Numbered from the stretch's first letter, positions 192-61,323 are shown. The stretch: 64,000 bases of DNA from IMGVR_UViG_3300042922_001182:174985-238984; one strand, 5' to 3'. Numbers and translations are program-made. Notes: a model not told the origin generated them from the letters alone.

Positions 192-203
192 AACATTTCA
201 TTA
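192..203 (+). promoter_or_regulatory. Late-type promoter AACA-N6-TA
   Basis: AACAtttcatTA. Confidence 0.7.
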
Positions 204-250
204 TCGAAAGCGCATTAATCCCTTCAAGGAGAGAGCGAGGAAAACTGTTT

Positions 251-1435
251 ATGCTTAAGGACATTTTCGAAGTGGTCCGGGCGGTGGCGGACTACGCTGA
301 CGTCGATTCGGCCAAGGAGAACATCAAGGACGCTCTCCTCACCAAGAGGAGGGATTCCATCGTCAGCAGGGCGAAGGACTCGATCGCCATGTTCCCGGCG
401 ATCTTCTCGACCAGCGTCAGCCAGACCACGGCCATGATGCTGATCAAGGCCCTGGAGGTCGAGTACGCGGAGCTGTTCCGGATCGTGCTGAGCAACGAGG
501 GAATCATCGACCTCGACAGCAACGACGCGAACACCAAGCGGAGTCTCGTCCGCAAGTTCCACCAGAACACCTACGTCGGCGCCCGTGACGGCATCGATGT
601 TAGCTCCGTCGTCAGGGAGCAGGTCCAGCCCGAGCACGTCTTCCAGGCCTGCCGCGAGCTGCTGACCGCCAGCGCCGAGGACCTCAACCTGGAGAGCCTC
701 AACGACATGACGATCAAGAACGTGCGGATCTTCACCGAGGCCCGCGAGAACGAGATCAAGAACAACGGCGTCCGGAGCCAGATCGACACCAAGGAGATCA
801 AGAAGTTCGGCACGATGGAGCCCCTGATCCTCCGGATCGAGGTCCAGTACAAGACGAACGCCGGTAGCACGACCACCACCGAGCTGGTCCTCGGCGTGAA
901 GGTCGTCCCCCACTTCGTCGACACGAACGAGATGACCTACTACGTGGGCAGCTCGATCAAGCACGAGTCGGTCGTCTTCCGCATCATCCAGTGGGCCACC
1001 GGCGAGATCCAGTTCTTCCGCGACCTGCTCCTGACCGTGGACCAGGCGAAGGACGACGCCCGCTCCAGCTCGTCCATGGGCCGCACCTCGGCCTCCCTGT
1101 GGTGGCACAAGCTCCGCAGCCTGGCAAAGTCGTCGAAGTTCCGCAACCTGCTCGGCACCGAGAAGATCCTGCCCAACGCGACGATGGTCCTGACCATGGA
1201 CGAGGCGCAGCACCTCAAGGCCACCGAGGGCCTGGACCTCATGGACCCCAAGAACGCCCAGAAGCTCGTCGAGGTGTTCTTCCTCATGAGGCTCACCGTG
1301 GTGGACGAGGCCGATGAGATCGCGTACATGTACGACGAGGACACCATGTCGTACAACCGCTACTCCTACTCGTCGTTGTCGAAGTCCGGCAACACCAACG
1401 AGCTCAAGGCGCTAGTCTCCCTGCTCAGCAGGTAG
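251..1435 (+). CDS. Putative virion (head) structural protein
   Basis: 394-aa ORF with GC3-rich codons; late-type promoter at 192-203; first of a 3-gene operon ending in a terminator. Confidence 0.55.
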   Translation: MLKDIFEVVRAVADYADVDSAKENIKDALLTKRRDSIVSRAKDSIAMFPAIFSTSVSQTTAMMLIKALEVEYAELFRIVLSNEGIIDLDSNDANTKRSLVRKFHQNTYVGARDGIDVSSVVREQVQPEHVFQACRELLTASAEDLNLESLNDMTIKNVRIFTEARENEIKNNGVRSQIDTKEIKKFGTMEPLILRIEVQYKTNAGSTTTTELVLGVKVVPHFVDTNEMTYYVGSSIKHESVVFRIIQWATGEIQFFRDLLLTVDQAKDDARSSSSMGRTSASLWWHKLRSLAKSSKFRNLLGTEKILPNATMVLTMDEAQHLKATEGLDLMDPKNAQKLVEVFFLMRLTVVDEADEIAYMYDEDTMSYNRYSYSSLSKSGNTNELKALVSLLSR

Positions 1436-1451
1436 TAACGGAGAGAAGAAG

Positions 1452-2438
1452 ATGAACCAGGACTTCGTTTACAGGACGATCCCCAACGTGGGCATCAACA
1501 GGGACGCGTTCCTCAAGCACACCTTGGTGCGCGAGGCCTCCGACGCCATGCGTTGGAACCGCCTCAACGAGGACGACAAGAGGGAGCTCCAGGCCAAGGT
1601 GGCGGAGTCCCTCTTCTTCACCGTGAAGGACAAGTCGTCGGAGCTCGAATACGACTCCATCGACAAGAGCGGCGGCGATATCGAGGACATGCCCGGCTAC
1701 GACGTGCTGAGCAACAGCATCCACAGCCTGCAGACCATGTACGCCAGCACCAAGTCGGCTCCCAGCGAGGTCAACGACCTCTTCCGGTGCCTGACCAACC
1801 TCCAGAAGTTCAAGCGCTACTTCACCCAGGCCTACGCCAAGGGCGACGAAGCCACCAAGCTGCTCTACCGCAACATGGTGGTGGCGCTGATCGCCGGTAC
1901 CTCCTTCATGGTGGCGACCCACGTCGAGTACATCAAGGAGCCGGGCGGAGAGTTCTCCGCGAAGCTGAAGACCCTGCGCACCATGGAGCGCAGCCTCTTC
2001 CTCGACAACATCGCGAAGTTCAACAGCATGGCCGACTCCGGCCAGCTGAAGACCTTCCTCGACGCCTCCTCCGGCCGCGACAACCTCGTCGGCATGGAGC
2101 TGGTGGCGGTGGGCGTGGGCGCGGTGGCGGTCGTGGGCTTGGTCCTCTGGACCCTGCGCGAGATCGTCTTCACCTACTTCAGGTTCCGAGTCGCCCTCTC
2201 GGAGGAGTTGAAGATGCTGGCGCTGTTCGTCCAGCTCCACTCCAACTCGCTCGCCCCCGAGAAGAAGAACGTGGCCGACAAGCAGCGGGCGATCGTGGAC
2301 GAACTGAATAAGTGGTCCGACCGAATCGCCGTCGATCAGAAGGCGGCTACCAAGGCGGCCGTGGCCGACCTGTCGGACGCGGATCGCGGGGCCACCATGA
2401 CGGCAGTGTCGAGCGCCCCCAGCGGAAACCTGCTGTAA
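1452..2438 (+). CDS. Putative virion/inner-head protein with a hydrophobic segment
   Basis: 328 aa; hydrophobic stretch LVAVGVGAVAVVGLVLWTL; lies in the late operon. Confidence 0.5.
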   Translation: MNQDFVYRTIPNVGINRDAFLKHTLVREASDAMRWNRLNEDDKRELQAKVAESLFFTVKDKSSELEYDSIDKSGGDIEDMPGYDVLSNSIHSLQTMYASTKSAPSEVNDLFRCLTNLQKFKRYFTQAYAKGDEATKLLYRNMVVALIAGTSFMVATHVEYIKEPGGEFSAKLKTLRTMERSLFLDNIAKFNSMADSGQLKTFLDASSGRDNLVGMELVAVGVGAVAVVGLVLWTLREIVFTYFRFRVALSEELKMLALFVQLHSNSLAPEKKNVADKQRAIVDELNKWSDRIAVDQKAATKAAVADLSDADRGATMTAVSSAPSGNLL

Positions 2439-2454
2439 GGGACACCCTCGGGAC

Positions 2455-2466
2455 AACAAAAAGATA
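2455..2466 (+). promoter_or_regulatory. Late-type promoter AACA-N6-TA
   Basis: AACAaaaagaTA. Confidence 0.7.
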
Positions 2467-2532
2467 AGGGTAAGAGGTGACCGCCGCTACGGTCCACTTT
2501 TTTGCATGCAAAAAGAAAGAAGGAGAAGCGGA

Positions 2533-3540
2533 ATGTTTCTGAACGAGAACAACAACACTTTCCGGAACGTGAACACCGGTATCGAGGCCAGCGAGACCAA
2601 CCTGATGGGCGGCTCGGTCGGCATGATGGACATCGCCCTGGAGTCGGAGACGACCTGGAACAACATCTGCGTCGCCATGATGCGTCTGGAGCACACCTCC
2701 TACGTGGAGAAGGACGACGTTCTGATGGAGCGCGGCGTCAAGGCCTTCTGGGGCAAGGTCGTCGCCTTCTTCAAGAAGATGATCGCCAAGGTCAAGGAGT
2801 GGGCCAAGAAGACCTGGAACTCGATCCAGTCGTTCTTCGCCAACTCCAAGAAGTGGCTGGAGCTGAACAAGGCCGCCCTCATGAAGAAGAACCTGAACGG
2901 CTTCAAGTTCTCCATCAACACCTTCCAGAACATCGAGACCGCCAGCGGCAAGATGGACGCCGCCGCTGCCAAGCAGGCCGTCGCCGCCTCCGCCGCTGCT
3001 GGTCGCAGCACGAAGGAAGATGACATGGACGAGTACGACTCGAACTTCCGCGAGGCCTTCCTCCAGGCCATGGGCATCGACGATGACTCCGATGCCCTCG
3101 GCACCGCCTTGAGCCTCTACTTCCGCGCCGACGAAGGCGTCAAGAAGGAGAAGGCCCTGTCGGCGGCCGAGATCGTCAAGGTCCTCGAAGAGACCCCCAA
3201 GGCCCAGCAGCAGGTGGATACCGGCGCCAAGGTGATGGAGCGCCTCGCCGCCCAGGGCATCACCCAGGCCGAGAAGGCCGAAGCCGCCGCCGAGAAGAAG
3301 GACAACGACAAGGGCCGCAAGGAGGCCGCCGGTCACCAGCGTGCCGTCAGCGCGATCCGCAGCCTGCTGGGCCTCCAGCAGCAGGTCCTGTCGGCTCTGG
3401 CCGGTGCCATCGCCGATCGCCACAACCAGTACTTCGCCGCTGCCAAGGCCGCGCTGTCGTACAAGCCCGCGAACGTGAAGGAGTCGACCGACTTCGGCAC
3501 CGACGAGGACGACGTGCTCGACGCGTTCATGCCCATCTAG
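2533..3540 (+). CDS. Putative internal head protein (phiKZ-like), Ala/Lys-rich
   Basis: SD AAGGAG before ATG 2533; own late promoter at 2455-2466; IALE/EASE possible cleavage sites followed by amphipathic GVKAFWGKVVAFFKKMIAKVKEW. Confidence 0.55.
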   Translation: MFLNENNNTFRNVNTGIEASETNLMGGSVGMMDIALESETTWNNICVAMMRLEHTSYVEKDDVLMERGVKAFWGKVVAFFKKMIAKVKEWAKKTWNSIQSFFANSKKWLELNKAALMKKNLNGFKFSINTFQNIETASGKMDAAAAKQAVAASAAAGRSTKEDDMDEYDSNFREAFLQAMGIDDDSDALGTALSLYFRADEGVKKEKALSAAEIVKVLEETPKAQQQVDTGAKVMERLAAQGITQAEKAEAAAEKKDNDKGRKEAAGHQRAVSAIRSLLGLQQQVLSALAGAIADRHNQYFAAAKAALSYKPANVKESTDFGTDEDDVLDAFMPI

Positions 3541-3567
3541 TAGCTCCGGCAAGCAACCAAGGAAACA

Positions 3568-3606
3568 AAGGACCGCATCCCCACTCGGGGATGCGGTCTT
3601 TCCTTT
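3568..3606. terminator. Bidirectional terminator
   Basis: GACCGCATCCCC/GGGGATGCGGTC hairpin between convergent genes. Confidence 0.7.
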
Positions 3607-3609
3607 GCT

Positions 3610-4938
3610 TTATCTCTTCGAGAACGTGCACGTCATCGTGCAGATCATCTCCTCCGTCTGGAGGTTGCGACCGACCCCGTGCAGCGAGAGGGCGTAGTCC
3701 CTCATGACGTACTCGCCGTTGAGCTCCTCCGACCTCTCCTTGTTGCTGAAGATGACGAAGAAGGACTTGTTGGGGGTGAAGATGGAGGGGTCGACGCCGG
3801 AGAAGCTGAAGGCCACCTCGCTGTTGTGCTCCGTGACGTGATGAGCGTGCGTCGTTTCGGCCATCGGGTTGTCGAACCTGTTGTAGAGGACCTTGATCTT
3901 GTCCTCCCCGGCGGCGAAGTTCCCTGGCCCGGCGGCCCCGTCCGTGCTGGTGCCCTCCTGGATGGCCACCTCCCTGATCTGTCCACCCAGCTCCTGGGAG
4001 TCCGAGAGGACGAAGAGCTTGGAGCCGAAGATCTCCTTCGTAGCTCGCCCTCCACGGTTGATGGCCACGGCGTTCTGCACCTTCACCTGGAAGGTCTTGT
4101 TCTTGGTGTCCTCGAAGACGCCGTTGAGCTCCGAAGAGGCGTCCACCTTGTCAGTGACGAAGATGTGGACCTCCCCGTACTCCGTCTTCTCCTTGACCTT
4201 GGAGTCCGCGCCAAGCATGTAGTGGCGGTCCAGGTCGAAGAAGAGGCGCATGCCGCCCTTGTAGATGCCGTAGGCGTCCTGGAGGTAGCGGAGCGAGCTG
4301 ATCACGTTCCCGGGCGGGACCAGGATCTGGTCGTAGACCTTGGTGTTGTCCGGGTTGCCGATCAGCTTGGGGGCGTCCCCGGAGGCGGTCTTCAGCATGT
4401 GAAGGACCACCGGGAGAACCGGGGTCTCCGTGTAGACGTCGTTGAAGATGGCCTTGTTGATGTCCAGGTGCTTCGAGGAGAGAAGCGTGGCCGTCCACTC
4501 GATGTCCCTTCGCTCTTCGGTCTCTACGGCCTGAGCTGGTTGCTCGGTGGGGGAGCGGTCGAAGTCGATGACCCGGAACTCCAGCTGCTTCCAGAGATCG
4601 GTCGGCGGCGGGGGCTCGGAGGCGCTGTTCTCGTCGGAGCTGTCGATGGTCCTATATCGCTTGATGCTGATCACCACCTTGGCGTCGTCGGTGTACTTCT
4701 GGAAGGCCAGCAGGAGCTCGTAGTTCAGCCGTAGGCCTAGGCCGATGACGGGGAAGAACTCGTCCCCGTCCACCTTGCCCTTGACCTGAATCTCCACGAT
4801 GCTCTTGATCAGGCTCATCACCCCGGCGTCCTCCGGGAGGATGAGGTCGGCCTGGGTGATTCGGAACTTGTACCGAGTCAGGTCCCCCAGGACCTTGTTG
4901 GACAGTCTGCCGTCTGCCTCGAAACCGGTGGGTGCCAT
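3610..4938 (-). CDS. Putative tail/baseplate structural protein
   Basis: 442-aa beta-rich ORF, last gene of a reverse operon with a late promoter; hub-like size; family not firmly recognised. Confidence 0.35.
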   Translation of the reverse strand: MAPTGFEADGRLSNKVLGDLTRYKFRITQADLILPEDAGVMSLIKSIVEIQVKGKVDGDEFFPVIGLGLRLNYELLLAFQKYTDDAKVVISIKRYRTIDSSDENSASEPPPPTDLWKQLEFRVIDFDRSPTEQPAQAVETEERRDIEWTATLLSSKHLDINKAIFNDVYTETPVLPVVLHMLKTASGDAPKLIGNPDNTKVYDQILVPPGNVISSLRYLQDAYGIYKGGMRLFFDLDRHYMLGADSKVKEKTEYGEVHIFVTDKVDASSELNGVFEDTKNKTFQVKVQNAVAINRGGRATKEIFGSKLFVLSDSQELGGQIREVAIQEGTSTDGAAGPGNFAAGEDKIKVLYNRFDNPMAETTHAHHVTEHNSEVAFSFSGVDPSIFTPNKSFFVIFSNKERSEELNGEYVMRDYALSLHGVGRNLQTEEMICTMTCTFSKR

Positions 4939-5310: not shown

Positions 5311-6417
5311 CTAGGTGCCCACCACGCCGCTGAAGCCCTCGAAGAGGTAGTCCAGCTTGATGTAGTTGGCGCCGTAGTAGCGCTCGTTCACGCGCTTGAG
5401 CGACTCGGGGTCGTACAGGTCGGTGATCTGGGAGCGGAGCATCGCCACCTCGGCGTCGGTGATGCAGGCGAAGGAGTCCTTGATGCTCAGCACTCGGAAG
5501 TTCTGCTCCAGGACCTTCAGCTCCTCGTCGGTTAGCGCTCCCTTCCGCTCGTCCTTGGACACGCGGGCGATGAGGTCATCGGGGTCGTCGTAGGCGGTCT
5601 GGGAGATCAGGCCGTCCTCCAGCCACCCCCGGATGCGCCCCAGGGCCTTCAGCGGGCCGATGCCCCGGCGCACCGCGTCGATGTCGTACCTCTTGGACCC
5701 GGAAAGGGCGAAGACGTACGGCAGGAGCTCGGGGCTGATGAAGCCGGGCACCTTGTCGTCGCTGCCCGCCACGGAGGCGATGGCGCTCTCCCGGTCGACG
5801 ACGTCGCTCTTCTCGCCCTTGGCGGTCATGACGATGGCGTACTCGTCGATCTCGGTGTACTGAACGGCCAGCGGGTCGTTGCTGATGACGCAGGTGAGCT
5901 GCCCGGGGACGTGGAACAGGTAGGGCACCACCCGGTGATCGGTCTCACCGGTGTCGAGGAAGTAGACGTAGGGGATGTACTCGCACACGCCCCGGGCCAG
6001 CTTGATGTTGATGTCCATGACCTCGTTCAGACCGGCGAACTCCGGCGAGGCGGGACCGCGCTTCCGGTAGTAGTCGCTGCGGTACTTGTCGTTGATCTGA
6101 AGCATCCGCTTGGCGGGCTTGCCGGAGTAGTAGAAGTAGACGTTGGTGTACATCTCCAGGCGGCTCCAGAAGTAGTGCCGGTAGTGGGCGGCGGCGTTGA
6201 GGATGCCCTCGGAGGAGATCGCCAGCCGCTGCTCCCTCTTGAGCTTGCCGAACATCTGCAGCATCTCGGGCTTGTAGAGGCTGTTCAGGATGCTCCCCAC
6301 ATCCAGGAAGATGTTGACGGTGTCGTAGCCCTCGGGGATCTTCGTCTTCGTCACCTCGTTGAGCACGTCGTACCGGATCTTCTTGCTGTGCAGGATCTTT
6401 TCAAGCGCGTCGTTCAT
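5311..6417 (-). CDS. PIN/FEN-like 5-prime-3-prime exonuclease-fold protein
   Basis: N-terminal VNIFLDVGSILNSL, later ISNDPL and LSGSKRYDIDAVRRGIGP (H3TH-like); catalytic acidic residues look partly degenerate. Confidence 0.45.
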   Translation of the reverse strand: MNDALEKILHSKKIRYDVLNEVTKTKIPEGYDTVNIFLDVGSILNSLYKPEMLQMFGKLKREQRLAISSEGILNAAAHYRHYFWSRLEMYTNVYFYYSGKPAKRMLQINDKYRSDYYRKRGPASPEFAGLNEVMDINIKLARGVCEYIPYVYFLDTGETDHRVVPYLFHVPGQLTCVISNDPLAVQYTEIDEYAIVMTAKGEKSDVVDRESAIASVAGSDDKVPGFISPELLPYVFALSGSKRYDIDAVRRGIGPLKALGRIRGWLEDGLISQTAYDDPDDLIARVSKDERKGALTDEELKVLEQNFRVLSIKDSFACITDAEVAMLRSQITDLYDPESLKRVNERYYGANYIKLDYLFEGFSGVVGT

Positions 6418-6461: not shown

Positions 6462-6473
6462 TATGGGGCTGTT
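6462..6473 (-). promoter_or_regulatory. Late-type promoter AACA-N6-TA
   Basis: AACAgccccaTA. Confidence 0.7.
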
Positions 6474-6758: not shown

Positions 6759-6789
6759 CGAATCTAAGCCATTTCCGACCGTATATTAT
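6759..6789 (+). promoter_or_regulatory. Bipartite early-type promoter CGAATCT-N16-TATATTAT
   Basis: Exact 16-nt spacer, as in 3 other copies. Confidence 0.75.
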
Positions 6790-6833: not shown

Positions 6834-7595
6834 ATGAACAACAACAAGCCTTTCGTCCGTGGTAACTTCGAGCAGGCCACCTGGCTGACCGAGCGGATCA
6901 TGCAGCACATCGTCACCGGCAAGGCGAAGCGCGTGCGGGACTACCTGGAGTTCGCCCGCCGCCAGCTCCAGGTTTCTGAGATCCCGGCGGACAACAAGCT
7001 GAAGGTCAGCAGCCTGAAGGTCATCGGCATCCACGAGGACGTCCTCGAACTCGCCATCGAGCTCCTCAAGTCGGAGGGCTGGAAGGCGGGCAACGTCTCC
7101 CAGGAGGACTTCCTCAATGGTTCCCCCTGGCTCCTCGACGCCAAGATGCAGGAAGATCTCCTGAAGAAGGCGGAGAAGGACGAGGAGAAGAAATCCGAAT
7201 CCATCGGGTCCATCTTCCTCTTCGTCAAGGCCAACCAGGTGGTCCTGGACAAGACCACCATCTACCGCGCCGAGTGCGTCGCGGAGGACATCGTCCTCCA
7301 GAGCAAGATGCGCAGCTGCATCGGACTGACCGTCGAGGAGATCGAGGACCGAGGCGGCTTCCTCGCGGAGGCCATGCACGACCTCCAGGGCAAGATGCTC
7401 ACGAAGACCTTCAACTTCCTGAAGAGCTTCGACGACAACGAGCTCAGCACCGCCCAGCGGGACAAGCTCTTGGGCATCATCCTGGGGAACACCGTCGCTC
7501 ACCTCGACGCGATCATCCCCGGCTGCGGGGAGGCCTTCGAGGCGTCCTCCAGCGCCAAGGTCCAGGCCCTGGTCAAGACCGGTTCCAAGCGCTAA
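6834..7595 (+). CDS. Hypothetical early protein
   Basis: 253 aa; SD AGGAGG; bipartite early promoter at 6759-6789. Confidence 0.8.
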   Translation: MNNNKPFVRGNFEQATWLTERIMQHIVTGKAKRVRDYLEFARRQLQVSEIPADNKLKVSSLKVIGIHEDVLELAIELLKSEGWKAGNVSQEDFLNGSPWLLDAKMQEDLLKKAEKDEEKKSESIGSIFLFVKANQVVLDKTTIYRAECVAEDIVLQSKMRSCIGLTVEEIEDRGGFLAEAMHDLQGKMLTKTFNFLKSFDDNELSTAQRDKLLGIILGNTVAHLDAIIPGCGEAFEASSSAKVQALVKTGSKR

Positions 7596-7633
7596 GAAGA
7601 AGGGGAAGCCAGGCGGCTTCCCCTTCTTTTTTT
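7596..7633. terminator. Bidirectional terminator
   Basis: AGAAGGGGAAGCC/GGCTTCCCCTTCT plus T-run. Confidence 0.75.
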
Positions 7634-8396
7634 AGCCCTCGGAGTCCTTCAACCGGACCAGGTAGGCCATGAACGAGTCGTAGTCCTTGTCGACGATCTT
7701 GAAGTACCTGATTCCGAGCCTCTTCACCTCGGCCTCCTTGGCGATCTCCTTGACCCGTTCTCGCTCCCTGTAGTCGTGGGTGTTGGCGATAGATGGGTCC
7801 ACGCCGTCTGCAACGGAGGAACCCTTCACCTCCACGATGAGGTCGTAGCTGGTGAGGTAGAAATCGGGGATGTAGACCCGCTTGACGCCTCCCTCCTCGT
7901 AGACGATGGTCTGCGGGGCGGGGGAGATCACGTCGCTGGGGTTCCACTCAAGGACGACGTCCATGAACTCAAGGAAGTCCCTCTCGTAGGAGCCGGTGTA
8001 GGTGGAGCTGGTGCCGTCCCTCCACTCGTAGGTGCCCGAGATGCCACGGTTGGCGAGCATCTTGCGCTGCTGCTCGGGGTCGTCCAGAAGGTGCTCCTTC
8101 CCGAACTTCTTGACCATCCGCTCCCTGAACTGGCTGCGGTACTTCTCCCGGCAGGAGGTCTCCGGACGGGAGCACAGGCGCTCGTAGCGGCCCGCCTTCT
8201 CGTTGAACGGGACGGACTTGCGGCACATGATGCAGCTACCCCTACGGCCGCCGTTCCTGGAGTCGAAGAGGGCCTGGAGGGGGCTGACGCCGCCGATGGC
8301 CTTGAGCCCGTCCGAGTGCTCCCGCTCGATGTGCTCGCATAGGAGCTTCTCGTCCTTGCCCGTCCTGTCGCAGAACGGGCACTTCTGCTTCCTCAT
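7632..8396 (-). CDS. Zn-finger plus TnsA-like PD-(D/E)xK endonuclease
   Basis: CPFC..HIEREH, CIMC, and YIPDFYLTSYDLIVEVKG nuclease motif. Confidence 0.65.
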   Translation of the reverse strand: MRKQKCPFCDRTGKDEKLLCEHIEREHSDGLKAIGGVSPLQALFDSRNGGRRGSCIMCRKSVPFNEKAGRYERLCSRPETSCREKYRSQFRERMVKKFGKEHLLDDPEQQRKMLANRGISGTYEWRDGTSSTYTGSYERDFLEFMDVVLEWNPSDVISPAPQTIVYEEGGVKRVYIPDFYLTSYDLIVEVKGSSVADGVDPSIANTHDYRERERVKEIAKEAEVKRLGIRYFKIVDKDYDSFMAYLVRLKDSEG

Positions 8397-8422: not shown

Positions 8423-8434
8423 TAATATGGTGTT
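8423..8434 (-). promoter_or_regulatory. Late-type promoter overlapping an early-type CATATTAT
   Basis: AACAccatatTA; CATATTAT at 8422-8429 on the same strand. Confidence 0.6.
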
Positions 8435-8455
8435 TCCACCAGAAGGGCGAAGGCC

Positions 8456-8467
8456 AACAAAACCATA
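8456..8467 (+). promoter_or_regulatory. Late-type promoter AACA-N6-TA
   Basis: AACAaaaccaTA. Confidence 0.7.
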
Positions 8468-8497: not shown

Positions 8498-8926
8498 ATG
8501 GCAGACGAAATCGTGCCCGAGTACCAGAAGGAGGAGTTCTTCCTCCAGGTGGGCGACTTCAAGAAGGCCAACTCGGTGACCAAGAACCTAGCCCTCGCGA
8601 GGGTGCTGCAGACCCTCATCATCCTGATGCCGGGCACCTACCCCAACGCCCCCGACATGGGCGTCGGGATCGAGCAGTACCTCTTCGAGTTCCTGGACGG
8701 CGTGACCATCCAGCAGCTCACCCAGAGGCTGCGGGACCAGATCGACACCTACATCCCCAACAACGACATCAACGGGATCGAGATCCAACCGATCAAGGGC
8801 CCCGACGGCAAGACCAACACCCTGGGAATGATCTTCACGCTGGGGAATTCGGAACAGGTGGCCTTGGCCTTCGACCTGGCCGCATCCCGCAAGACCAAGG
8901 TGGTCTCCCGCGTCGTCCTCGCCTGA
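8498..8926 (+). CDS. Baseplate wedge protein, gp25/GPW-like
   Basis: LILMPGTYPNAPDMGVGIEQYLFE motif; 142 aa; late promoter at 8456-8467. Confidence 0.65.
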   Translation: MADEIVPEYQKEEFFLQVGDFKKANSVTKNLALARVLQTLIILMPGTYPNAPDMGVGIEQYLFEFLDGVTIQQLTQRLRDQIDTYIPNNDINGIEIQPIKGPDGKTNTLGMIFTLGNSEQVALAFDLAASRKTKVVSRVVLA

Positions 8927-11627: not shown

Positions 11628-13382
11628 ATGTCCCAGAAAAAGAAGACCGACGTGGACAGGAAGATGCCGTTGGAGGAGACCTTTATCACCTCGAACGTCG
11701 TGACCGAGGCCGACACCCGTCGGCAGATCGGGGACACCCTGACCTTCGTCTCCAAGGCGCTCGCCAAGACGCTCGGCCCCTACGGCTCGACCACCATCGT
11801 CCACGATCGCGAGGCCATGGCCCACTTCATGACGAAGGACGGCTACAAGGTGCTCAACTCCATCCAGATCATGGAGGAGGTCCCGCGCACGGTTCTGAAC
11901 ATCATCACCCGCGTCAGCCGGACCCTGGTCCGCACGGTGGGCGACGGATCGACGTCCTCGATCGTGGTTTCCAACAACCTCTACCACCGGATCGCCAAGC
12001 TCCTCCAGAAGTACTCCATCGCCCCCAAGGACATGGTGGACGCGCTCACCCTCGCCTCCCAGATGCTCGCCGACCTGATCGACAAGAAGGCGTACCAGAT
12101 CCCCGACCTCGACACCGAGGAGGGGCTGGAGCTGGTCGCGTGCGTTGCCGCCGTGTCCACCAACAACGACCTGGCGTCGGGCGACCTCGTCGCCAAGATC
12201 TTCCAGGAGATCGGCCGACACGGCTTCGTCACCATCGACGACAACTTCTCCGAGACCGACGAGTACAAGATCACGAACGGCCTGGAGCACAACCGGGGCT
12301 GGATCGACTCTGTCTTCATCAACGACCACAACCGCAGGTCGGTAGAGTTCGAGAACGCATTCGTCCTCCTGGTGGACGACTTCATGACGCAGAACGACCT
12401 CCAGGTGCTGGCTGAGATGATGACAGAGATCGTTGTCAATAACCGCTCTCCCATGGTCATCGTGGCACGCGGCTTCGACGATGCCACGACCAAGTTCTTC
12501 CGGGACAACAAGGTGAGCAGCCCCACGCTCCCCATCTGCGTGGTGGACATCGCCATGTCGAGCAAGGACCACCTGGAGCGCTTCGAGGACATCGCGGCCT
12601 TCATCGGCGGGCGACCCCTCCGCAAGAGCCAGGGCGAGAAGCTGAGCGAAATCAGCCCTGAGGAGCTCGGCATCGTGAAGGCCTTCAGCAGCGACGAGCT
12701 GAAGACGCGCTTCGTCGGCGGTCGGGGCGTCGCCACGGCGAAGCTGAACGAACGCGTGGAAAAGCTCAAGGAGAAGATCCAGGAGCTCTCCGGCGTCAGC
12801 GACCGGGTCAACCGGGACGCCGAGATCCGACTGGTGGAGAAGCGCATCGCCGCGCTGACCTCCGGGATGGCCGTCCTCCGGGTCGGCGGCGCGACGGACT
12901 CCGAGCGGAGCGCCCGCAAGGACCTGTTCGAGGATGCCGTCTACGCCGTCCAGAGCGCCCTGCGCCACGGCATCGTCATGGGCGGCACCCTGGCGGTCCC
13001 GCACATCATCGCCTCCACCCCTACCATCTACGGCGACTTCGCCAACCTGGTGAGGGAGCGCGAGATGCTGCCCACCGTCGAGAAGCTGAACGACTTCAGC
13101 AAGGACTTCCTGGAGTGCATCCTGAAGTCGTTCAAGATGTCGTTCCGCCAGGTGCTGCTCAACTCCGGCATGAAGGAGAACGTCGCCGATGACAACGTGA
13201 ACCGCTGCGTCACCGGGGGCGTAATCTACAACCTCAGCACCCGGGAGTTCGAGCCGTGGGAGGAGACCTCGATCGTGAACTCGGCGGACACGGAGAAGGA
13301 GATCATGAAAGCGGCCTTCTCCATCATCTCGCTCCTCGCAACGTCGAACCAATTCCTTGCCTCCCGGCCGGGGACGCTCTAA
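11628..13382 (+). CDS. groEL: Phage GroEL-like chaperonin
   Basis: KTLGPYG, TKDG, VGDGSTSS and RKDLFEDAVYAVQSALRHGIVMGG motifs; SD before ATG 11628. Confidence 0.9.
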   Translation: MSQKKKTDVDRKMPLEETFITSNVVTEADTRRQIGDTLTFVSKALAKTLGPYGSTTIVHDREAMAHFMTKDGYKVLNSIQIMEEVPRTVLNIITRVSRTLVRTVGDGSTSSIVVSNNLYHRIAKLLQKYSIAPKDMVDALTLASQMLADLIDKKAYQIPDLDTEEGLELVACVAAVSTNNDLASGDLVAKIFQEIGRHGFVTIDDNFSETDEYKITNGLEHNRGWIDSVFINDHNRRSVEFENAFVLLVDDFMTQNDLQVLAEMMTEIVVNNRSPMVIVARGFDDATTKFFRDNKVSSPTLPICVVDIAMSSKDHLERFEDIAAFIGGRPLRKSQGEKLSEISPEELGIVKAFSSDELKTRFVGGRGVATAKLNERVEKLKEKIQELSGVSDRVNRDAEIRLVEKRIAALTSGMAVLRVGGATDSERSARKDLFEDAVYAVQSALRHGIVMGGTLAVPHIIASTPTIYGDFANLVREREMLPTVEKLNDFSKDFLECILKSFKMSFRQVLLNSGMKENVADDNVNRCVTGGVIYNLSTREFEPWEETSIVNSADTEKEIMKAAFSIISLLATSNQFLASRPGTL

Positions 13383-13540: not shown

Positions 13541-13548
13541 TATATTAT
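13541..13548 (+). promoter_or_regulatory. Early-type motif TATATTAT
   Basis: Intergenic, upstream of 13616. Confidence 0.6.
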
Positions 13549-13615: not shown

Positions 13616-14446
13616 ATGGCAAGCGAAAGACGGATCTACACCCCGAACGATGAGGTTTGGGATATGACCATTGGTCAGCTCCTGCAGAACCCCACCGGCT
13701 GGGGCTCGGCCGCCGTCGGGAACCGCGAGCGGATCAAGAAGGACCTGGCCGACAGGTTCCAGGTGCTGATGGTGAAGGCCAAGGGCGAGATCGTCCACCA
13801 GGTCTACACCGACGGCGACGACTTCGTGGTTCACCTGCGCGTTCCTTCGGAGACCATCGAGGGTCTCAAGTACGACGTGGTCCTGCGCCTCCACCCCGAG
13901 ACGGCCGACCAAGCCCTATCGGACTACCGGATGACGCTGTTCTCCAACAGCCCTCACTTCGTCTTCACGTACGCGTACGTGCTGAACCAGAAGGGCTCAT
14001 TGGAGGAGACGGTCAAGGGCAAGATGTCCAGCAAGGCGCTGGACGAGGAGCCCAAGATCAGGAACCCGATCGAGACCTGGGGCTTCGAGAAGAGCACGTA
14101 CTTCGCCTGCCTGTACCTCCGGCACTCCATGCGCACCCGCTCTAGGAATGCCATGGCCAAGGACTCCCTCAAGCTCAACCGGAAGCTGCTCCTGGCGAAC
14201 GTCAAAACGTCGGAGGCGAAGATGGTCGAGTACAAGCAGAAGGAGAAGGAGGCCAAGGAGGCCCGGAAGTCCAAGAAGGCGGCTGCGGCCGGTCGTAATG
14301 CCACCAGGGGGCTGGGGCAGGAGGCCGGGGCAGAGGGCCGCGTCGGGAAGGTCAGGGAGGCCCCCGGCGCTGCTGGTCGTCAGGTCAAACAGTCCAAGTC
14401 GGTCGGTAAGACCGGACGGACCCAGCGCAAGCGCCCTACCCGCTAG
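13616..14446 (+). CDS. Hypothetical protein with basic C-terminal tail
   Basis: SD before ATG 13616; early motif TATATTAT at 13541-13548. Confidence 0.75.
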   Translation: MASERRIYTPNDEVWDMTIGQLLQNPTGWGSAAVGNRERIKKDLADRFQVLMVKAKGEIVHQVYTDGDDFVVHLRVPSETIEGLKYDVVLRLHPETADQALSDYRMTLFSNSPHFVFTYAYVLNQKGSLEETVKGKMSSKALDEEPKIRNPIETWGFEKSTYFACLYLRHSMRTRSRNAMAKDSLKLNRKLLLANVKTSEAKMVEYKQKEKEAKEARKSKKAAAAGRNATRGLGQEAGAEGRVGKVREAPGAAGRQVKQSKSVGKTGRTQRKRPTR

Positions 14447-14486: not shown

Positions 14487-15938
14487 TTGCAAGAGACCGT
14501 AGAAATCAGAGAATCCGGGAAGATCATCGCGATCGACTTCTCCACCCCGTTCAAGCACGACCTTGAGCACCTTCACGAGTTCAGCCTCGCTCCGAAGCGC
14601 AACTTTGCCAACATCGCCGACTCCATCAAGGAGATCCTCGGCTATGTTATCGGGCGCAGCGAATCCGTGTTGTACGGCTTCCTCCACTTGCAGAACCGTC
14701 TGCAGGACGAGGACGTCATCCTCTCGGAGGAGGAGGTCGCGGACCTGGTGATGTCGGAAATCGTCAACGACGACGCCCGAGCCATCATCGACGAGCACAT
14801 CGAGTCCACCTACTCGGTGAACCTGGACGAGATGACCAAGACGACCAAGAAGGTCAACGAGGAGCTCCAGTTCACCGACATGCACGCCCGCATCATCCTG
14901 AAGGCGAGCATGGCGATGCGCCTGTCCATCCCGGCGCTCACCCAGTATCTACACGTCTACCAACTCGGCAAGTCCGAGAACCTGTTCTTCAACGTCTTCA
15001 GCCGGATCATGGACGCCTTCACGCCGGAGGGTTACGACGCCAAGGCCAAGATCATGAAGCTGACCGGGTCGATCCTGTCGTCCACCCGGTACAGCGACAA
15101 GGTGCTGTGGGCGTACCTGAAGAACATGGCGCTCGACATCCAGACGCTCCACCGGGAGTTCTTCAAGAAGCTGCTCGTCAATGTGCTCCCCAAGCTCAAG
15201 GTCGATCAGAACGTCGTCCCCTACCTCCACGTCACGATCAAGAACCAGATCGACTTCCTGTTCCGCTCCAAGTTCGCCGTCTCCTACAAGTCGGTGAACA
15301 TGATGGAGTCGGACTCGGAGGGCCTGACGGAATTCGACAAGTTCGAGTCCCAGATGGCGATGGTGGACGAGGGCATGTCGGTCATCTCGAAGGACTCCAT
15401 CTCGGAGGAGATCGAGAACACCGCCCGCGCTATCGGAACCACGCTCACGGTCCAGGAGCTGGAGTACTTCCGGGAGCGCATCGTCATCAACAAGACGCAG
15501 ACCAACCTCGTGTTCACCTTCTTCAGCAAGTTCGTGGGCGATTACTTCGACCTGTACAACTGCTCGAAGGACGAGTACGTGGCGCTCTGCGTGCTGACCC
15601 GCAAGTGGCTCCAGAAGAACGGCTACCGCTACCTGTGGCAGTACGTCACCGGTATCCCGGACGAGCTCCGGGAGCGGAAGACGATCAACAAGAAGGAGTT
15701 CATGGACCGACTGCTGTCGTCGCGCCAGTACAAGTCGCTCTTCGACCAGCAGTACAAGCACACGGTCAGCAACATCGTCGACAGCGGCGTCATCCTCAAG
15801 ACGATCGCCACCCTGAAGGCGAACAAGTTCTACAACATCCCGGACATGGAGGAGGGCTCGGACGTCATGGCCGAGATCGATCCCAAGATCGAGGACCTCA
15901 GCGCGGAGTTCTTGAACTTCGTGGCTGCGGCGGTCTAG
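14487..15938 (+). CDS. Candidate non-virion RNAP promoter-specificity (sigma-like) subunit
   Basis: About 483 aa, alpha-helical; TTG start after SD; two genes from the chaperonin as with AR9 gp228/gp226. Synteny inference only. Confidence 0.4.
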   Translation: MQETVEIRESGKIIAIDFSTPFKHDLEHLHEFSLAPKRNFANIADSIKEILGYVIGRSESVLYGFLHLQNRLQDEDVILSEEEVADLVMSEIVNDDARAIIDEHIESTYSVNLDEMTKTTKKVNEELQFTDMHARIILKASMAMRLSIPALTQYLHVYQLGKSENLFFNVFSRIMDAFTPEGYDAKAKIMKLTGSILSSTRYSDKVLWAYLKNMALDIQTLHREFFKKLLVNVLPKLKVDQNVVPYLHVTIKNQIDFLFRSKFAVSYKSVNMMESDSEGLTEFDKFESQMAMVDEGMSVISKDSISEEIENTARAIGTTLTVQELEYFRERIVINKTQTNLVFTFFSKFVGDYFDLYNCSKDEYVALCVLTRKWLQKNGYRYLWQYVTGIPDELRERKTINKKEFMDRLLSSRQYKSLFDQQYKHTVSNIVDSGVILKTIATLKANKFYNIPDMEEGSDVMAEIDPKIEDLSAEFLNFVAAAV

Positions 15939-19921: not shown

Positions 19922-19933
19922 TATCTTGGTGTT
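19922..19933 (-). promoter_or_regulatory. Late-type promoter AACA-N6-TA
   Basis: AACAccaagaTA. Confidence 0.65.
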
Positions 19934-20944: not shown

Positions 20945-21087
20945 CTCCCGGTGATCTTGTGGAACGCCGTCGCGAGCATCGCCACGGCGACCAGGAGCAT
21001 GACGAATGACGTCGTCAGCTCCTCGTGGTTGTCAGCCACCCAATCCGCCGCCTTGCCGAGGGCGTCCTGCACCACCCGGGGGTACAT
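20935..21087 (-). CDS. Small membrane protein
   Basis: TGATG overlap with the kinase stop; TM SFVMLLVAVAMLATAF. Confidence 0.5.
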   Translation of the reverse strand: MYPRVVQDALGKAADWVADNHEELTTSFVMLLVAVAMLATAFHKITGRWV

Positions 21088-21713: not shown

Positions 21714-21725
21714 TAGGGGGTTGTT
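21714..21725 (-). promoter_or_regulatory. Late-type promoter AACA-N6-TA
   Basis: AACAacccccTA. Confidence 0.7.
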
Positions 21726-24144: not shown

Positions 24145-24156
24145 CATCTTGGTGTT
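24145..24156 (-). promoter_or_regulatory. Late-type promoter AACA-N6-TG
   Basis: AACAccaagaTG upstream of RNase H. Confidence 0.55.
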
Positions 24157-26316: not shown

Positions 26317-26328
26317 TAATCATTTGTT
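26317..26328 (-). promoter_or_regulatory. Late-type promoter AACA-N6-TA
   Basis: AACAaatgatTA. Confidence 0.7.
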
Positions 26329-32095: not shown

Positions 32096-32107
32096 AACAA
32101 TCCCATA
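32096..32107 (+). promoter_or_regulatory. Late-type promoter AACA-N6-TA
   Basis: AACAatcccaTA. Confidence 0.7.
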
Positions 32108-48476: not shown

Positions 48477-48878
48477 CTAGTCCTTGGTCTCCTCCACGGA
48501 GACCTTGCCCTTGAAGCCCTTGAGGTCCACGCCGTCCTTGGCCCTCGCGACGGCCTCGCCGCCGCTACCGGCCCAGCCGACGACCACCTTGTCCTCGCCG
48601 CCGTCGGCGGAGTGGAAGGTGACCTTGAACTTCTTGTCGCCGGGCTGCTTGCCGTCCTCGCCGGTCTTGAACGACGCCAGCTCGGCCTCGCTCACCACCC
48701 GGTTCAGGCCGGTCAGGCGGCACCCGGGGTACTCCCGGGCGAAGCCCTCAAGGATGGCCACGGCGTCCTCGGAGTCGCTGAACCTCGTCAGCACACCCCC
48801 CTCCAGGGTGACGTACTCGACGGCCCAGACGGCGCCATCCGGCGCAGCGCCCGCGAGCGCTGAGAAACGATCTGTCAT
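48477..48878 (-). CDS. Hypothetical late protein (isolated antisense gene)
   Basis: SD AGGAGGT before ATG 48878; late promoter at 48909-48920. Confidence 0.7.
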   Translation of the reverse strand: MTDRFSALAGAAPDGAVWAVEYVTLEGGVLTRFSDSEDAVAILEGFAREYPGCRLTGLNRVVSEAELASFKTGEDGKQPGDKKFKVTFHSADGGEDKVVVGWAGSGGEAVARAKDGVDLKGFKGKVSVEETKD

Positions 48879-48908: not shown

Positions 48909-48920
48909 CATAGGAGTGTT
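48909..48920 (-). promoter_or_regulatory. Late-type promoter AACA-N6-TG
   Basis: AACActcctaTG. Confidence 0.6.
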
Positions 48921-60351: not shown

Positions 60352-60364
60352 GCTGCAGAACGAC

Positions 60365-60601: not shown

Positions 60602-60634
60602 GGTGATGTCTCCTATCTGCCCTCTAGGGGCTAA

Positions 60635-60985
60635 TTACCAAACCGCCTCGCTAGCCTTGGGCTGACCGGGGTAGAGCGGGGTGCCGTCGAGCTTCACCCA
60701 CCGCCCGTCGGCGTAGTAGGCCCCGACCGTCTTGGTCTCCTCCTCGATGCGCTTGAGGCGCCCCGCGTCGGCCTTGATGGGCTTCCCGTCCTGGGAGACC
60801 CGGGTGGCGGTGTGCCCCACCGCGTACCCGACCGTGACCTCCCCCTGGGGGGTGGCGACCTTGCGGGCCTGGACGTGGTCGAACGCCACGAAGTCCACCG
60901 TCACCCGCCTGCACCCCCGGTGCCCCTCGATCCACAACGGGGCCTTGTAGAAGGTGGGGGCGTCGTTCCTGAGCTGGTCGTTCAT
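60635..60985 (-). CDS. Hypothetical early protein
   Basis: SD AAGGAG; 116 aa. Confidence 0.7.
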   Translation of the reverse strand: MNDQLRNDAPTFYKAPLWIEGHRGCRRVTVDFVAFDHVQARKVATPQGEVTVGYAVGHTATRVSQDGKPIKADAGRLKRIEEETKTVGAYYADGRWVKLDGTPLYPGQPKASEAVW

Positions 60986-61045
60986 GCTCGTTCTCCTTCG
61001 CTAGCTATTGTGGAAAAATAAGAGGCCTGCTAGGGCCTCTTACCT

Positions 61046-61231
61046 CTAGGGGACGACGGTGATGGGGGTGCTCTGCCAGCACTCGGGGCACTTGCCCGAG
61101 GGCTCGGTCGCCATCCCGTGGCGGGCCCCCTCGCCGCCGGTGAGGCGCACCTGGGGGACGCCCACGGTGGAGGTGACGCGGCTGAGGTCGTTGAGGGCGG
61201 CCTGGAGGCCGGGGTTGAACTTGGACTGCAT
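61046..61231 (-). CDS. Small early protein
   Basis: SD AAGGAG; bipartite early promoter at 61272-61302. Confidence 0.6.
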   Translation of the reverse strand: MQSKFNPGLQAALNDLSRVTSTVGVPQVRLTGGEGARHGMATEPSGKCPECWQSTPITVVP

Positions 61232-61271
61232 ATCTCTAATCTCCTTCTACAGACTGTGGGTTATCGTAGGA

Positions 61272-61302
61272 ATAATATGTGTAGACCCCTCCGCTAGATT
61301 CG
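61272..61302 (-). promoter_or_regulatory. Bipartite early-type promoter CGAATCT-N16-CATATTAT
   Basis: Reverse complement, exact 16-nt spacer. Confidence 0.75.
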
Positions 61303-61311
61303 GTTACGACG

Positions 61312-61323
61312 AACAACCCCATA
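61312..61323 (+). promoter_or_regulatory. Late-type promoter AACA-N6-TA
   Basis: AACAaccccaTA. Confidence 0.7.

What the first reader, a model, noticed from the sequence alone, without database searches (positions are those of the whole stretch)
192..61323. AR9-type late promoter AACA-N6-TA/TG, 12 copies, in a GC-rich genome
Seen: exact-spacing copies at 192, 2455, 6462, 8423, 8456, 19922, 21714, 24145, 26317, 32096, 48909 and 61312. All are intergenic, sense to the next gene, and mostly precede head, baseplate, RNAP or core genes. Known: Bacillus phage AR9 non-virion RNAP recognises this consensus in the template strand and requires deoxyuridine there, and AR9 is very AT-rich. Inference: this promoter logic is conserved in a much more GC-rich phage. 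That raises the question of whether this DNA contains dU or whether its RNAP reads T.
Basis: partly seen in the sequence, partly recalled or inferred. Interest (0 to 1): 0.7.

Follow-up and report, generated by a model that had tools for sequence, protein, structure and literature searches.

The report
AR9-type late promoters, GC-rich jumbo phage
A 239-kb, 63.5 % GC soil phage distantly related to the uracil-DNA Bacillus phage AR9 keeps AR9's short late-promoter signal (AACA-N6-TA/TG) and the polymerase subunit that reads it. This extends a known promoter type to a new, GC-rich lineage and leaves open whether its DNA carries uracil.

Summary
All 12 sites exist, are intergenic and point at the next gene, 24-66 nt before its start codon. 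The motif is not chance. Genome-wide, upstream regions hold 39 copies at spacing 6 against 4-11 at other spacings, and 5.6±2.4 in shuffles. The genome is a complete IMG/VR soil phage whose only phage relatives are the AR9/PBS1, phiR1-37, S6 and LPJP1 group, at about 27-30 % protein identity with long synteny. It encodes all four non-virion RNAP core subunits and, inside the window, the gp226 promoter-specificity subunit. The same scan recovers AR9's known late promoters. Orthologous genes carry the motif in both phages (p = 2e-4), and relatives from 24 to 66 % GC keep it at the same intergenic positions. AR9's early promoter (ATATTAT-N5-TG) is also conserved. The dU question stays open. For dU: the U-selecting Val206 is kept, a dTMP-phosphatase homologue is kept, and there is no thymidylate synthase, dUTPase or UDG. 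Against: no dCTP deaminase of any fold, βN K375 replaced by Asp, and very high GC. Verdict: a new member of a known kind, of moderate interest.

The parts
192..203 (+). Late-type promoter AACATTTCATTA, 47 nt before the virion structural gene 251-1435 (AR9 gp213 homologue)
2455..2466 (+). Late-type promoter AACAAAAAGATA, 66 nt before the virion structural gene 2533-3540 (AR9 gp215 homologue)
6462..6473 (-). Late-type promoter AACAGCCCCATA, 44 nt before gene 5311-6417(-) (AR9 gp219 homologue, function unknown)
8423..8434 (-). AACACCATATTA, 26 nt before the endonuclease gene 7632-8396(-). It overlaps an early-type ATATTAT core, so the class is ambiguous or dual. The AR9 orthologue also has AACA-N6-TA.
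8456..8467 (+). Late-type promoter AACAAAACCATA, 30 nt before the baseplate-wedge gene 8498-8926. The position is conserved in AR9 and seven relatives.
19922..19933 (-). Late-type promoter AACACCAAGATA, 48 nt before the small gene 19640-19873(-)
21714..21725 (-). Late-type promoter AACAACCCCCTA, 30 nt before the guanylate-kinase-like gene 21087-21683(-) (AR9 gp237 homologue)
24145..24156 (-). Late-type promoter, TG variant AACACCAAGATG, 58 nt before the RNase H gene 23388-24086(-)
26317..26328 (-). Late-type promoter AACAAATGATTA, 27 nt before gene 25597-26289(-) (AR9 gp260 homologue). It lies back to back with the early-type core at 26343-26349(+).
32096..32107 (+). Late-type promoter AACAATCCCATA, 29 nt before the probable GTG start at 32137 of the virion structural gene ending at 34203 (AR9 gp259 homologue)
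48909..48920 (-). Late-type promoter, TG variant AACACTCCTATG, 30 nt before gene 48477-48878(-), function unknown
61312..61323 (+). Late-type promoter AACAACCCCATA, 24 nt before the ACP-like gene 61348-61668. The virion-RNAP β' C-terminal piece (61680-62912) follows in the same operon.
14487..15938 (+). Homologue of AR9 gp226, the nvRNAP promoter-specificity subunit. Its helix YSDKVLWAYLKNM aligns to AR9 YSDVVIWTYLKNM (V206, I207, Y210).
13542..13548 (+). Early-type promoter core ATATTAT, upstream of the operon 13664-14446 plus the gp226 homologue
   Evidence: AR9 early promoters
61680..62912 (+). Virion RNAP subunit (homologue of the AR9 gene at 220773-221978), a late gene as expected for a packaged enzyme

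Best explanation
The 12 sites, and about 40 genome-wide, are late promoters of the AR9 type. Shown: exact-spacing AACA-N6-T(A>G) motifs sit a median of 38 nt before start codons of mostly virion genes and virion-RNAP genes. The phage encodes a complete AR9-like non-virion RNAP, with β'N, β'C, βN and βC pieces plus a gp226-like specificity subunit. Inferred by homology with AR9: a virion-packaged RNAP first transcribes early operons from CACATATTAT-N5-TG promoters. These operons include several non-virion RNAP genes; early-type motifs lie upstream of the βC, β'C and gp226 units. The resulting five-subunit holoenzyme then binds the template strand 3'-(T/U)(T/U)G(T/U)-5' at -11 to -8 through the gp226 2.1bis helix and βN, and starts RNA at the final A or G of the motif. 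Whether the template pyrimidines are dU (as in every characterised relative) or T is unresolved. I put dU at about 0.55-0.6.
For: Enrichment, strandedness and exact spacing of the motif. The distance to the start codon is like AR9's: median 38.5 nt (IQR 30-53.5) against 30 nt (26-42). The method recovers AR9's dRNA-seq-defined consensus (consensus from PMC7598289 and PMC9209446). All five nvRNAP subunits are present. The gp226 helix T-x-Y-S-D-K-V-[ILM]-W is conserved. Motif presence is associated between orthologues of this phage and AR9, including major head, tail sheath, tape measure, head protease, baseplate wedge and virion-RNAP genes (p = 2e-4). Positions are conserved across relatives of 24-66 % GC. 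Sigma-70-like promoters are not enriched: 1 found against 2.8 expected in 20 kb. An AR9-like early motif lies upstream of nvRNAP βC, of the unit holding β'C, and of the gp226 operon. For dU: V206, Y210 and βN R363 are kept. A homologue of AR9 gp150, the probable PBS1 dTMP phosphatase, keeps its DxD motif (PMC12697855). There is no ThyA, ThyX, thymidylate kinase, dUTPase or UDG.
Against: No transcription start data exist for this phage; no RNA run was listed. A few motif-bearing genes are not obviously late: a DnaB-like helicase, one DNA-polymerase piece, RNase H and a guanylate-kinase-like gene. Some of the ~40 sites must therefore be chance, or belong to AR9's 'continuous' class. A transcription-unit-level class comparison with AR9 is only weakly significant (p = 0.035). 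Against dU specifically: no cytidine-deaminase-fold or trimeric dCTP deaminase is present, although all four isolates and 4 of 5 complete relatives have one. βN K375, which hydrogen-bonds the -10 U in AR9, aligns to Asp. GC of 63.5 %, with GC3 of about 0.93, is unlike every known dU jumbo phage. Unrepaired C-to-U deamination in U-DNA should push a genome toward AT; this last point is my inference.
Confidence: 0.82

Rival explanations
1. The promoter is the same, but the DNA is ordinary T-DNA. The high-GC lineages gave up dU, which explains the loss of the dCTP deaminase, and their nvRNAP reads 3'-TTGT-5' through pocket changes other than the engineered V206G.
For: No Dcd of any fold is present in this genome or in the other complete high-GC genome G008, while 8 of the 8 other complete genomes (4 isolates, 4 complete IMG/VR relatives) have one. 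The two high-GC lineages are not sisters in the gp226 tree, and the nearest gp226 relatives are 31-34 % GC. βN K375 aligns to Asp and gp226 I207 to Leu. Very high GC3 argues against a deamination-driven AT bias (inference).
Against: V206 is kept, and in AR9 only its removal allowed T at -10. T at -11 is excluded by the bound DNA conformation rather than by one residue (PMC9209446). The dTMP-phosphatase-like gene is kept with its catalytic motif; if it still acts as a dTMP phosphatase it would deplete a T-DNA phage's own precursor (inference). No thymidylate synthase or thymidylate kinase is encoded. Host RNR or host Dcd plus a dUTPase inhibitor could supply dUTP without a phage Dcd (inference).
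Confidence: 0.38
2. The matches are a compositional by-product: AT-richer intergenic DNA in a GC-rich genome produces AACA...TA by chance.
For: Intergenic DNA is AT-richer (57 % GC against 63.5 %). Twenty-two of the 37 window hits lie in coding DNA and are probably chance.
Against: The effect is specific to spacing 6: 39 hits against 4-11. Shuffles of the same upstream regions give 5.6±2.4. There is a strand bias of 39 sense to 14 antisense, the distance to start codons is tight, and positions are conserved in relatives.
Confidence: 0.02
3. The motif is read by a host RNA polymerase holoenzyme (an alternative sigma factor), or it is the operator of a phage DNA-binding regulator, rather than a site for the phage nvRNAP.
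For: There is no direct biochemical link between the motif and the enzyme in this phage.
Against: The motif is identical in sequence and spacing to the one AR9 nvRNAP uses in vitro (PMC9209446, PMC7598289). It is shared by relatives infecting hosts as different as Bacillus and Yersinia, with metagenomic relatives spanning 24-66 % GC, which a host factor would not explain. The specificity subunit is conserved. Sigma-70-like sites are not enriched.
Confidence: 0.05
4. The motif acts at the RNA level, as a processing site or 5'-UTR element, not as a promoter.
For: It lies in 5' leaders, and transcription starts are unmapped here.
Against: In AR9 the terminal purine is a primary 5' end by differential RNA-seq, and the motif works in vitro on DNA (PMC7598289). 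Several sites follow terminator-like hairpins with T-runs, which marks unit boundaries. No Rfam family was found in the window.
Confidence: 0.04

Closest known systems
Late promoters of Bacillus phage AR9/PBS1 (5'-AACA-N6-T-A/G(+1)-3'), read on the template strand by the five-subunit non-virion RNAP with gp226
   Same: The tetramer, the 6-nt spacing and the terminal T-purine are identical. The distance to start codons is similar. The same classes of downstream genes carry it (head, sheath, tape measure, wedge, virion RNAP). All five enzyme subunits have homologues, and the 2.1bis helix is conserved, including V206 and Y210.
   Different: The genome is 63.5 % GC against 27.8 %. Protein identity is only about 25-48 %. 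βN K375 aligns to Asp and gp226 F261 to Ser. No Ugi, Dcd or RNR homologues were found. The GC-rich background exposes extra preferences: A/T at motif position 10 in 34 of 40 sites (p = 5e-8), and G depletion in the spacer (27 of 200 against 57 expected), also seen in AR9. Transcription starts and U-dependence are untested.
Early (virion-RNAP) promoters of AR9 and the MarsHill-like Staphylococcus phages (AAATATATATTAT / TATATTAT)
   Same: The ATATTAT core is followed by N5-TG, and the motif lies upstream of nvRNAP and other non-structural operons (bioRxiv 10.1101/2020.12.14.422802).
   Different: The 5' half has become C-N3-CAC instead of A/T-rich. There are 25 sense sites within 150 nt of a start codon.
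phiKZ-type nvRNAP late promoters (TATG at the start site)
   Same: Both are short start-site-proximal signals read by a split-subunit phage RNAP with a fifth subunit.
   Different: There is no AACA element in phiKZ. The fifth subunit is different, and phiKZ has T-DNA and a phage nucleus (PMC7598289). The present motif is clearly of the AR9 kind.

Membership tests
AR9-type nvRNAP late promoter | Non-template consensus AACA, exactly 6 nt, then T and A/G | tested here: met
   39 sense upstream copies at N6 against 4-11 at other spacings, and 5.6±2.4 in shuffles. The same scan recovers AR9's sites.
AR9-type nvRNAP late promoter | Located upstream of late (virion and virion-RNAP) genes | tested here: met
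   Major head, sheath, tape measure, head protease, wedge, tail fibre, several virion proteins and three virion-RNAP units carry it. The orthologue association with AR9 gives p = 2e-4. A minority of downstream genes are not obviously late.
AR9-type nvRNAP late promoter | Phage encodes the four split β/β' nvRNAP subunits | tested here: met
   β'N at G000 2363-3736, βC at 73653-75590, βN at 83807-85225 and β'C at 145002-146873, E 1e-77 to 1e-150 against AR9. βN against PDB 7S00, E 2.5e-108.
AR9-type nvRNAP late promoter | gp226-like specificity subunit with a conserved 2.1bis helix | tested here: met
   Window 14487-15938 against AR9 gp226/PDB 7S01_A, E 6e-46. YSDKVLWAYLKNM aligns to YSDVVIWTYLKNM.
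AR9-type nvRNAP late promoter | Transcription starts at the terminal purine (+1) | not testable with these tools
   No RNA run was listed for this sequence.
AR9-type nvRNAP late promoter | Template-strand recognition that requires dU at -11 and -10 | not testable with these tools
dU-DNA jumbo phages (PBS1/AR9, phiR1-37, S6, LPJP1) | Phage dCTP deaminase (Dcd) supplying dUTP | tested here: not met
   No PF00383 match, no PF22769 match, and no H/C-A-E...P-C-x-x-C signature in six frames. A Dcd is present in all four isolates and 4 of 5 complete relatives.
dU-DNA jumbo phages (PBS1/AR9, phiR1-37, S6, LPJP1) | Enzyme removing dT nucleotides (Dtm or Dtt) | tested here: inconclusive
   A homologue of AR9 gp150 lies at G000 137991-138689 (E 4e-29, DxD motif kept), and 12 of 14 relatives have one. 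The Pfam NT5C match is sub-threshold (E 0.008). That gp150 equals Dtm_PBS1 (A0A223LEB8) is my inference from the paper's description. Activity is untested. No Ham1-type Dtt was found.
dU-DNA jumbo phages (PBS1/AR9, phiR1-37, S6, LPJP1) | No thymidylate synthase, dUTPase or UDG of its own | tested here: met
   PF00303, PF02511, PF00692, PF08761, PF03167 and PF02223 are all absent from a genome CheckV rates 100 % complete. ThyA and ThyX are also absent in all 14 relatives.
dU-DNA jumbo phages (PBS1/AR9, phiR1-37, S6, LPJP1) | Proteins reported as exclusive to uracil-DNA phages (PMC10303552, Table 3) | tested here: met
   The five AR9 entries visible in Table 3 (the excerpt read was cut off) have homologues here. 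Four are in the window: 13664-14446, 24490-25221(-), 25597-26289(-) and 32137-34203. The fifth is at G000 170070-172646. These may mark the clade rather than the DNA chemistry.
dU-DNA jumbo phages (PBS1/AR9, phiR1-37, S6, LPJP1) | dU chemically present in virion DNA | not testable with these tools
   The sequence is a metagenome assembly, and only assembler contigs are held for the one run that contains it.

The most novel reading that the evidence does not exclude
This is a dU-substituted genome at 63.5 % GC, the first high-GC member of the uracil-DNA jumbo-phage lineage. It keeps U-dependent template-strand promoter recognition but has lost the phage dCTP deaminase. It would therefore obtain dUTP from host pathways (host Dcd or RNR, with dUTPase blocked). 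A second, independent high-GC lineage (G008) lacks the deaminase too.
Probability: 0.5. Interest if true: 0.7.

Novelty: new member of a known kind. Interest (0 to 1): 0.5.

Why it matters
In the literature I could read, the AR9 late promoter is defined experimentally only for AR9. Two papers say it cannot be found bioinformatically in AT-rich relatives (PMC7598289; the MarsHill preprint). In this GC-rich genome the motif stands out from the background without any transcript data. That shows the signal is conserved across a family spanning 24-66 % GC. It also exposes extra preferences, A/T at position -2 and G-poor spacers, that AT-rich genomes hide. The genome is a natural test case for U-versus-T promoter reading. 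It retains the valine that excludes thymine in AR9 but lacks the deaminase that all characterised dU relatives use. Reconstituting its polymerase, or probing its DNA, would show whether uracil-dependent transcription survives at high GC. It would also show how a phage leaves or maintains uracil DNA.

Tried and rejected
(1) Megablast of 8 kb of the window against the phage collection found nothing. Relatives are visible only at protein level.

(2) I tried a dU-versus-T test by restriction-site avoidance. The idea was that T-containing palindromes should be unconstrained in U-DNA. The genome strongly avoids CTCGAG, CCGCGG, GCCGGC and CACGTG. But the dU control AR9 also avoids T-containing sites (GGTACC, CTGCAG, GAGCTC), so the test does not discriminate.

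(3) Complex prediction with gp226, βN and the template strand of the 8456 promoter was not folded by the tool. It counts neither way.

(4) RNA runs: none was listed. The only holder is the probable source metagenome, kept as contigs.

(5) The Pfam NT5C six-frame search of the genome missed the AR9 gp150 homologue. A direct hmmscan gave only E 0.008, so that call rests on homology to AR9.

(6) A transcription-unit-level early/late class comparison with AR9 was noisy, because AR9's AT-rich background gives many false late hits (p = 0.035).

(7) Pfam scans of ten large window proteins without AR9-based names gave nothing. tRNA and Rfam scans of the window were empty.

(8) The metagenome record of the closest gp226 relative (L028) could not be searched for Dcd. 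The J Virol version of the MarsHill paper was not held, so I used the preprint.

(9) The unlisted hit 6782(-) is the reverse complement of an early promoter's spacer. Hits 61341(-) and 6610(+) are too far from a start codon or antisense. I do not count them as late promoters.

Full report
**What the window is.** The window is the last 64 kb of a single-contig record of 238,984 bp (G000:C1:174985-238984). IMG/VR classes it as a virus with direct terminal repeats, and CheckV rates it 100 % complete. The one sequencing run that holds it is a soil metagenome. GC is 63.5 %. Real genes have GC3 of 0.8-0.98, which let me build a gene map of 274 genes covering 93 % of the genome. Megablast finds nothing in the phage collection. 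At protein level the only phage relatives are AR9/PBS1 and allies, Yersinia phiR1-37, the S6/MarsHill-like Staphylococcus phages and Listeria LPJP1. Weaker hits go to Fusobacterium phages. Identity is about 27-30 %. I rebuilt AR9 (251,042 bp, 27.8 % GC) from six annotated stretches. Sixty-nine of the 274 proteins hit it, in long syntenic runs.

**The observation.** All 12 listed coordinates match AACA-N6-T[AG]. The window has 37 matches against 14.2±3.9 in shuffles.
- Fifteen matches are intergenic: the 12 listed plus 6610(+), 6782(-) and 61341(-).
- Every listed site points at the next gene and ends 24-66 nt before its start codon.
- For 32096 the true start is probably the GTG at 32137. The stretch up to 32277 has GC3 of 0.87, and the AR9 orthologue has a matching N-terminal extension. 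That puts the motif 29 nt upstream.

Genome-wide there are 49 hits in 17.7 kb of intergenic DNA and 122 in 221 kb of coding DNA. In sense upstream regions, spacing 6 gives 39 hits, while spacings 2-5 and 7-10 give 4-11. The antisense count at spacing 6 is 14, explained in part by divergent intergenic regions. Shuffling each upstream region 1000 times gives 5.6±2.4, maximum 15. An unsupervised scan of all 4-mer/gap/2-mer dyads ranks AACA-6-TA second (29 observed, 3.6 expected). The top dyad belongs to a second motif, described below.

Forty sites lie within 120 nt of a sense start codon. Their consensus is AACA-N5-W-T-A(>G). Position 10 is A/T in 34 of 40 (p = 5e-8). The spacer is G-poor, with 27 of 200 against 57 expected.

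**What it is.** AR9's late promoters were defined by differential RNA-seq as 5'-A(-11)ACA-N6-T-A/G(+1). The non-virion RNAP holoenzyme reads them on the template strand, 3'-UUGU-N6-AU-5' (PMC7598289; PMC9209446). Four lines tie the present motif to that system.

1. *The enzyme is present.* Homologues of β'N, βC, βN and β'C are found at E 1e-77 to 1e-150. The specificity subunit gp226 lies inside the window at 14487-15938 (E 4e-48 against AR9; E 6e-46 against PDB 7S01_A).
2. *The method is validated.* The same gene-calling and spacing scan on AR9 gives 77 hits at N6 against 4-30 elsewhere. The distance to start codons is similar: median 30 nt in AR9 and 38.5 nt here.
3. *Orthologues share the motif.* Among 72 orthologous pairs, 21 have it upstream in both phages, 30 in neither, 5 only here and 16 only in AR9. 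Fisher p = 2e-4. The shared set includes major head protein, tail sheath, tape measure, tail fibre, baseplate wedge, several virion proteins and two virion-RNAP subunits. Many discordant cases are operon-internal genes.
4. *Relatives keep it in place.* Sixteen IMG/VR loci around gp226 homologues (24-66 % GC) together show 71 hits at N6 against 15-30 at other spacings. In the divergent endonuclease/baseplate-wedge intergenic region the motif sits 20-65 nt before the wedge gene in AR9, L010, L011, L012, L017, L020, L021, L023 and this phage. In most of these it also precedes the endonuclease gene, while the flanks are unalignable. The two closest gp226 relatives (45-46 % identity; L028 and L029) are 31-34 % GC and show the same arrangement.

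Sigma-70-like promoters are not enriched, with 1 against 2.8 expected in 20 kb.

**The second motif.** The heptamer ATATTAT/ATAATAT occurs 21 times and always between genes. Oriented to the downstream gene it reads C-N3-CACATATTAT-N5-TG(A). There are 25 sites within 150 nt of a start codon. AR9's annotated early promoters read AAATATATATTAT-N5-TG(A/T), and MarsHill has TATATTAT. Here the motif precedes nvRNAP βC, the unit holding β'C, the operon with the gp226 homologue (core at window 13542), and the long plus-strand block of small unknown genes at 35-61 kb. So both halves of the AR9 transcription programme are conserved: a virion RNAP on early promoters, then a newly made non-virion RNAP on late promoters.

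**Mechanism.** Shown: the motif statistics, gene content, homology and positional conservation. Inferred from AR9:
- The holoenzyme flips the template -11 and -10 pyrimidines into pockets formed by the gp226 2.1bis helix, βN and the DNA backbone.
- It stacks the -9 G on Tyr210.
- It initiates at the terminal purine.

The helix is T-x-Y-S-D-K-V-[ILM]-W in 30 family members. This phage has YSDKVLWAY against AR9's YSDVVIWTY.

**dU or T?** In AR9, V206 clashes with the methyl group of T at -10, and V206G accepts T. T at -11 is excluded by the bound DNA conformation.

*For dU:*
- The Val is kept. Across the family this position is V, T, I, S or A, with single R and P in the two most divergent homologues, and never G.
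- Tyr210 and βN Arg363 are kept.
- A homologue of AR9 gp150 is kept with its catalytic DxD motif, and it is present in all complete relatives. AR9 gp150 is a HAD 5'(3')-deoxyribonucleotidase-like protein. By its description it is the dTMP phosphatase Dtm_PBS1 of PMC12697855; that mapping is my inference.
- There is no ThyA, ThyX, thymidylate kinase, dUTPase of either type, or UDG.
- All five AR9 proteins visible in the list of proteins 'exclusive to uracil-DNA phages' have homologues here, four of them in the window (PMC10303552 Table 3, excerpt cut off). These may only mark the clade.

*Against dU:*
- No dCTP deaminase of the cytidine-deaminase fold or the trimeric type is present. Yet AR9, phiR1-37, S6, LPJP1 and 4 of 5 complete metagenomic relatives have one. 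The other exception is G008, the only other complete high-GC genome (65.7 %). It is not sister to this phage in the gp226 tree, although basal nodes are unresolved and its clade has a long branch.
- βN Lys375, a hydrogen-bond partner of the -10 U, aligns to Asp.
- A genome in which deaminated C cannot be told from legitimate U should drift toward AT, and every known dU jumbo phage is AT-rich. This is my inference.

The missing Ugi is uninformative, because non-Bacillus dU phages have no recognisable one either (PMC10303552). I estimate dU at about 0.55-0.6.

**Comparison and novelty.** The promoter class and its reader are known from AR9, so this is a new member of a known kind. Three points are new relative to the papers I could read:
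- The late motif is conserved outside the Bacillus phages, across 24-66 % GC.
- It can be found here without transcript data, whereas the review and the MarsHill study report that it cannot be predicted in AT-rich genomes.
- High-GC members have lost Dcd while keeping the U-selecting valine.

**Limits.** The gene map is my own heuristic. The number of true late promoters (about 40) includes some chance hits. Site 8423(-) overlaps an early-type core. No transcription start, enzyme activity or DNA chemistry could be tested.

Noticed in passing
window 6783-6789(+), 13542-13548(+), 21794(+), 22274(+), 22998(+), 26343(+), 30526(+), 35038(+), 41805(+), 46960(+), 61272-61278(-); 25 sites genome-wide: There is a second, strictly intergenic motif, C-N3-CACATATTAT-N5-TG(A), sense to downstream genes. 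It matches the architecture of AR9's early (virion-RNAP) promoter AAATATATATTAT-N5-TG. It precedes nvRNAP genes, the gp226 operon and blocks of small unknown genes.
   Followed up: partly
whole genome G000 (window included): Some 6-bp palindromes are extremely avoided: CTCGAG 0 observed against 138 expected, CCGCGG 0/112, GCCGGC 4/117, CACGTG 2/43, CGCGCG 2/37, GCGCGC 7/42. Others, such as GGGCCC (130/145), are normal. This looks like restriction-site avoidance and may hint at the host's restriction-modification systems.
   Followed up: partly
G000 and G008 (record of L022) against 12 relatives: The cytidine-deaminase-fold dCTP deaminase is present in all four isolates and four complete metagenomic relatives. 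It is absent from the two complete high-GC genomes (63.5 % and 65.7 % GC), which are not sisters in the gp226 tree.
   Followed up: partly
L028 and L029 (closest gp226 relatives, 45-46 % identity): The nearest relatives of this 63.5 % GC phage are 31-34 % GC and syntenic: endonuclease, wedge, GroEL, gp226, guanylate kinase, RNase H. That is a very large lineage-specific GC shift within one phage family.
   Followed up: partly
window 8423-8435(-): The listed site AACACCATATTA runs into ATATTAT, the early-type core. This promoter may be early, late or both, like AR9's continuously expressed class.
   Followed up: partly
6782(-) is the reverse complement of the spacer of the early promoter at 6783(+). 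6610(+) follows a bidirectional terminator-like hairpin 212 nt before gene 6834-7595. 61341(-) overlaps the start of gene 61348-61668 on the opposite strand. None looks like a typical late promoter.
   Followed up: yes
window 61348-61668(+): A small gene with a phosphopantetheine-attachment (acyl-carrier-protein-like) domain (Pfam PP-binding, E 3.5e-5) is the first gene of the late operon that continues into the virion-RNAP β' C-terminal piece.
   Followed up: no
window 32137-32277(+): The virion structural gene called from 32278 probably starts at the GTG at 32137. GC3 there is 0.87, and the AR9 orthologue has an N-terminal extension of similar length.
   Followed up: yes
G000 83807-85225 (L027), residue aligned to AR9 βN K375: The lysine that hydrogen-bonds the -10 uracil in AR9 aligns to Asp here, in both BLAST and HMMER alignments, next to a 1-residue gap. 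The neighbouring K372, K377 and the stacking R363 are conserved.
   Followed up: partly
G000 139669-142252(-), outside the window: The family-B DNA polymerase catalytic gene, a single gene in AR9 (125147-127072), is in two ORFs here (248 and 411 aa). They are separated by about 600 bp holding a 61-aa plus-strand ORF and an early-type motif.
   Followed up: no
window 35000-61000(+): This is a long run of small plus-strand genes with no AR9 homologue. The four largest (301-654 aa) had no Pfam match when scanned. Early-type promoters lie at 35038, 41805 and 46960. These are presumably lineage-specific early genes.
   Followed up: partly
window 11628-13382(+): A GroEL-like chaperonin gene is syntenic with AR9's (34 % identity) and with Cpn60 genes in L028 and L029.
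   Followed up: no
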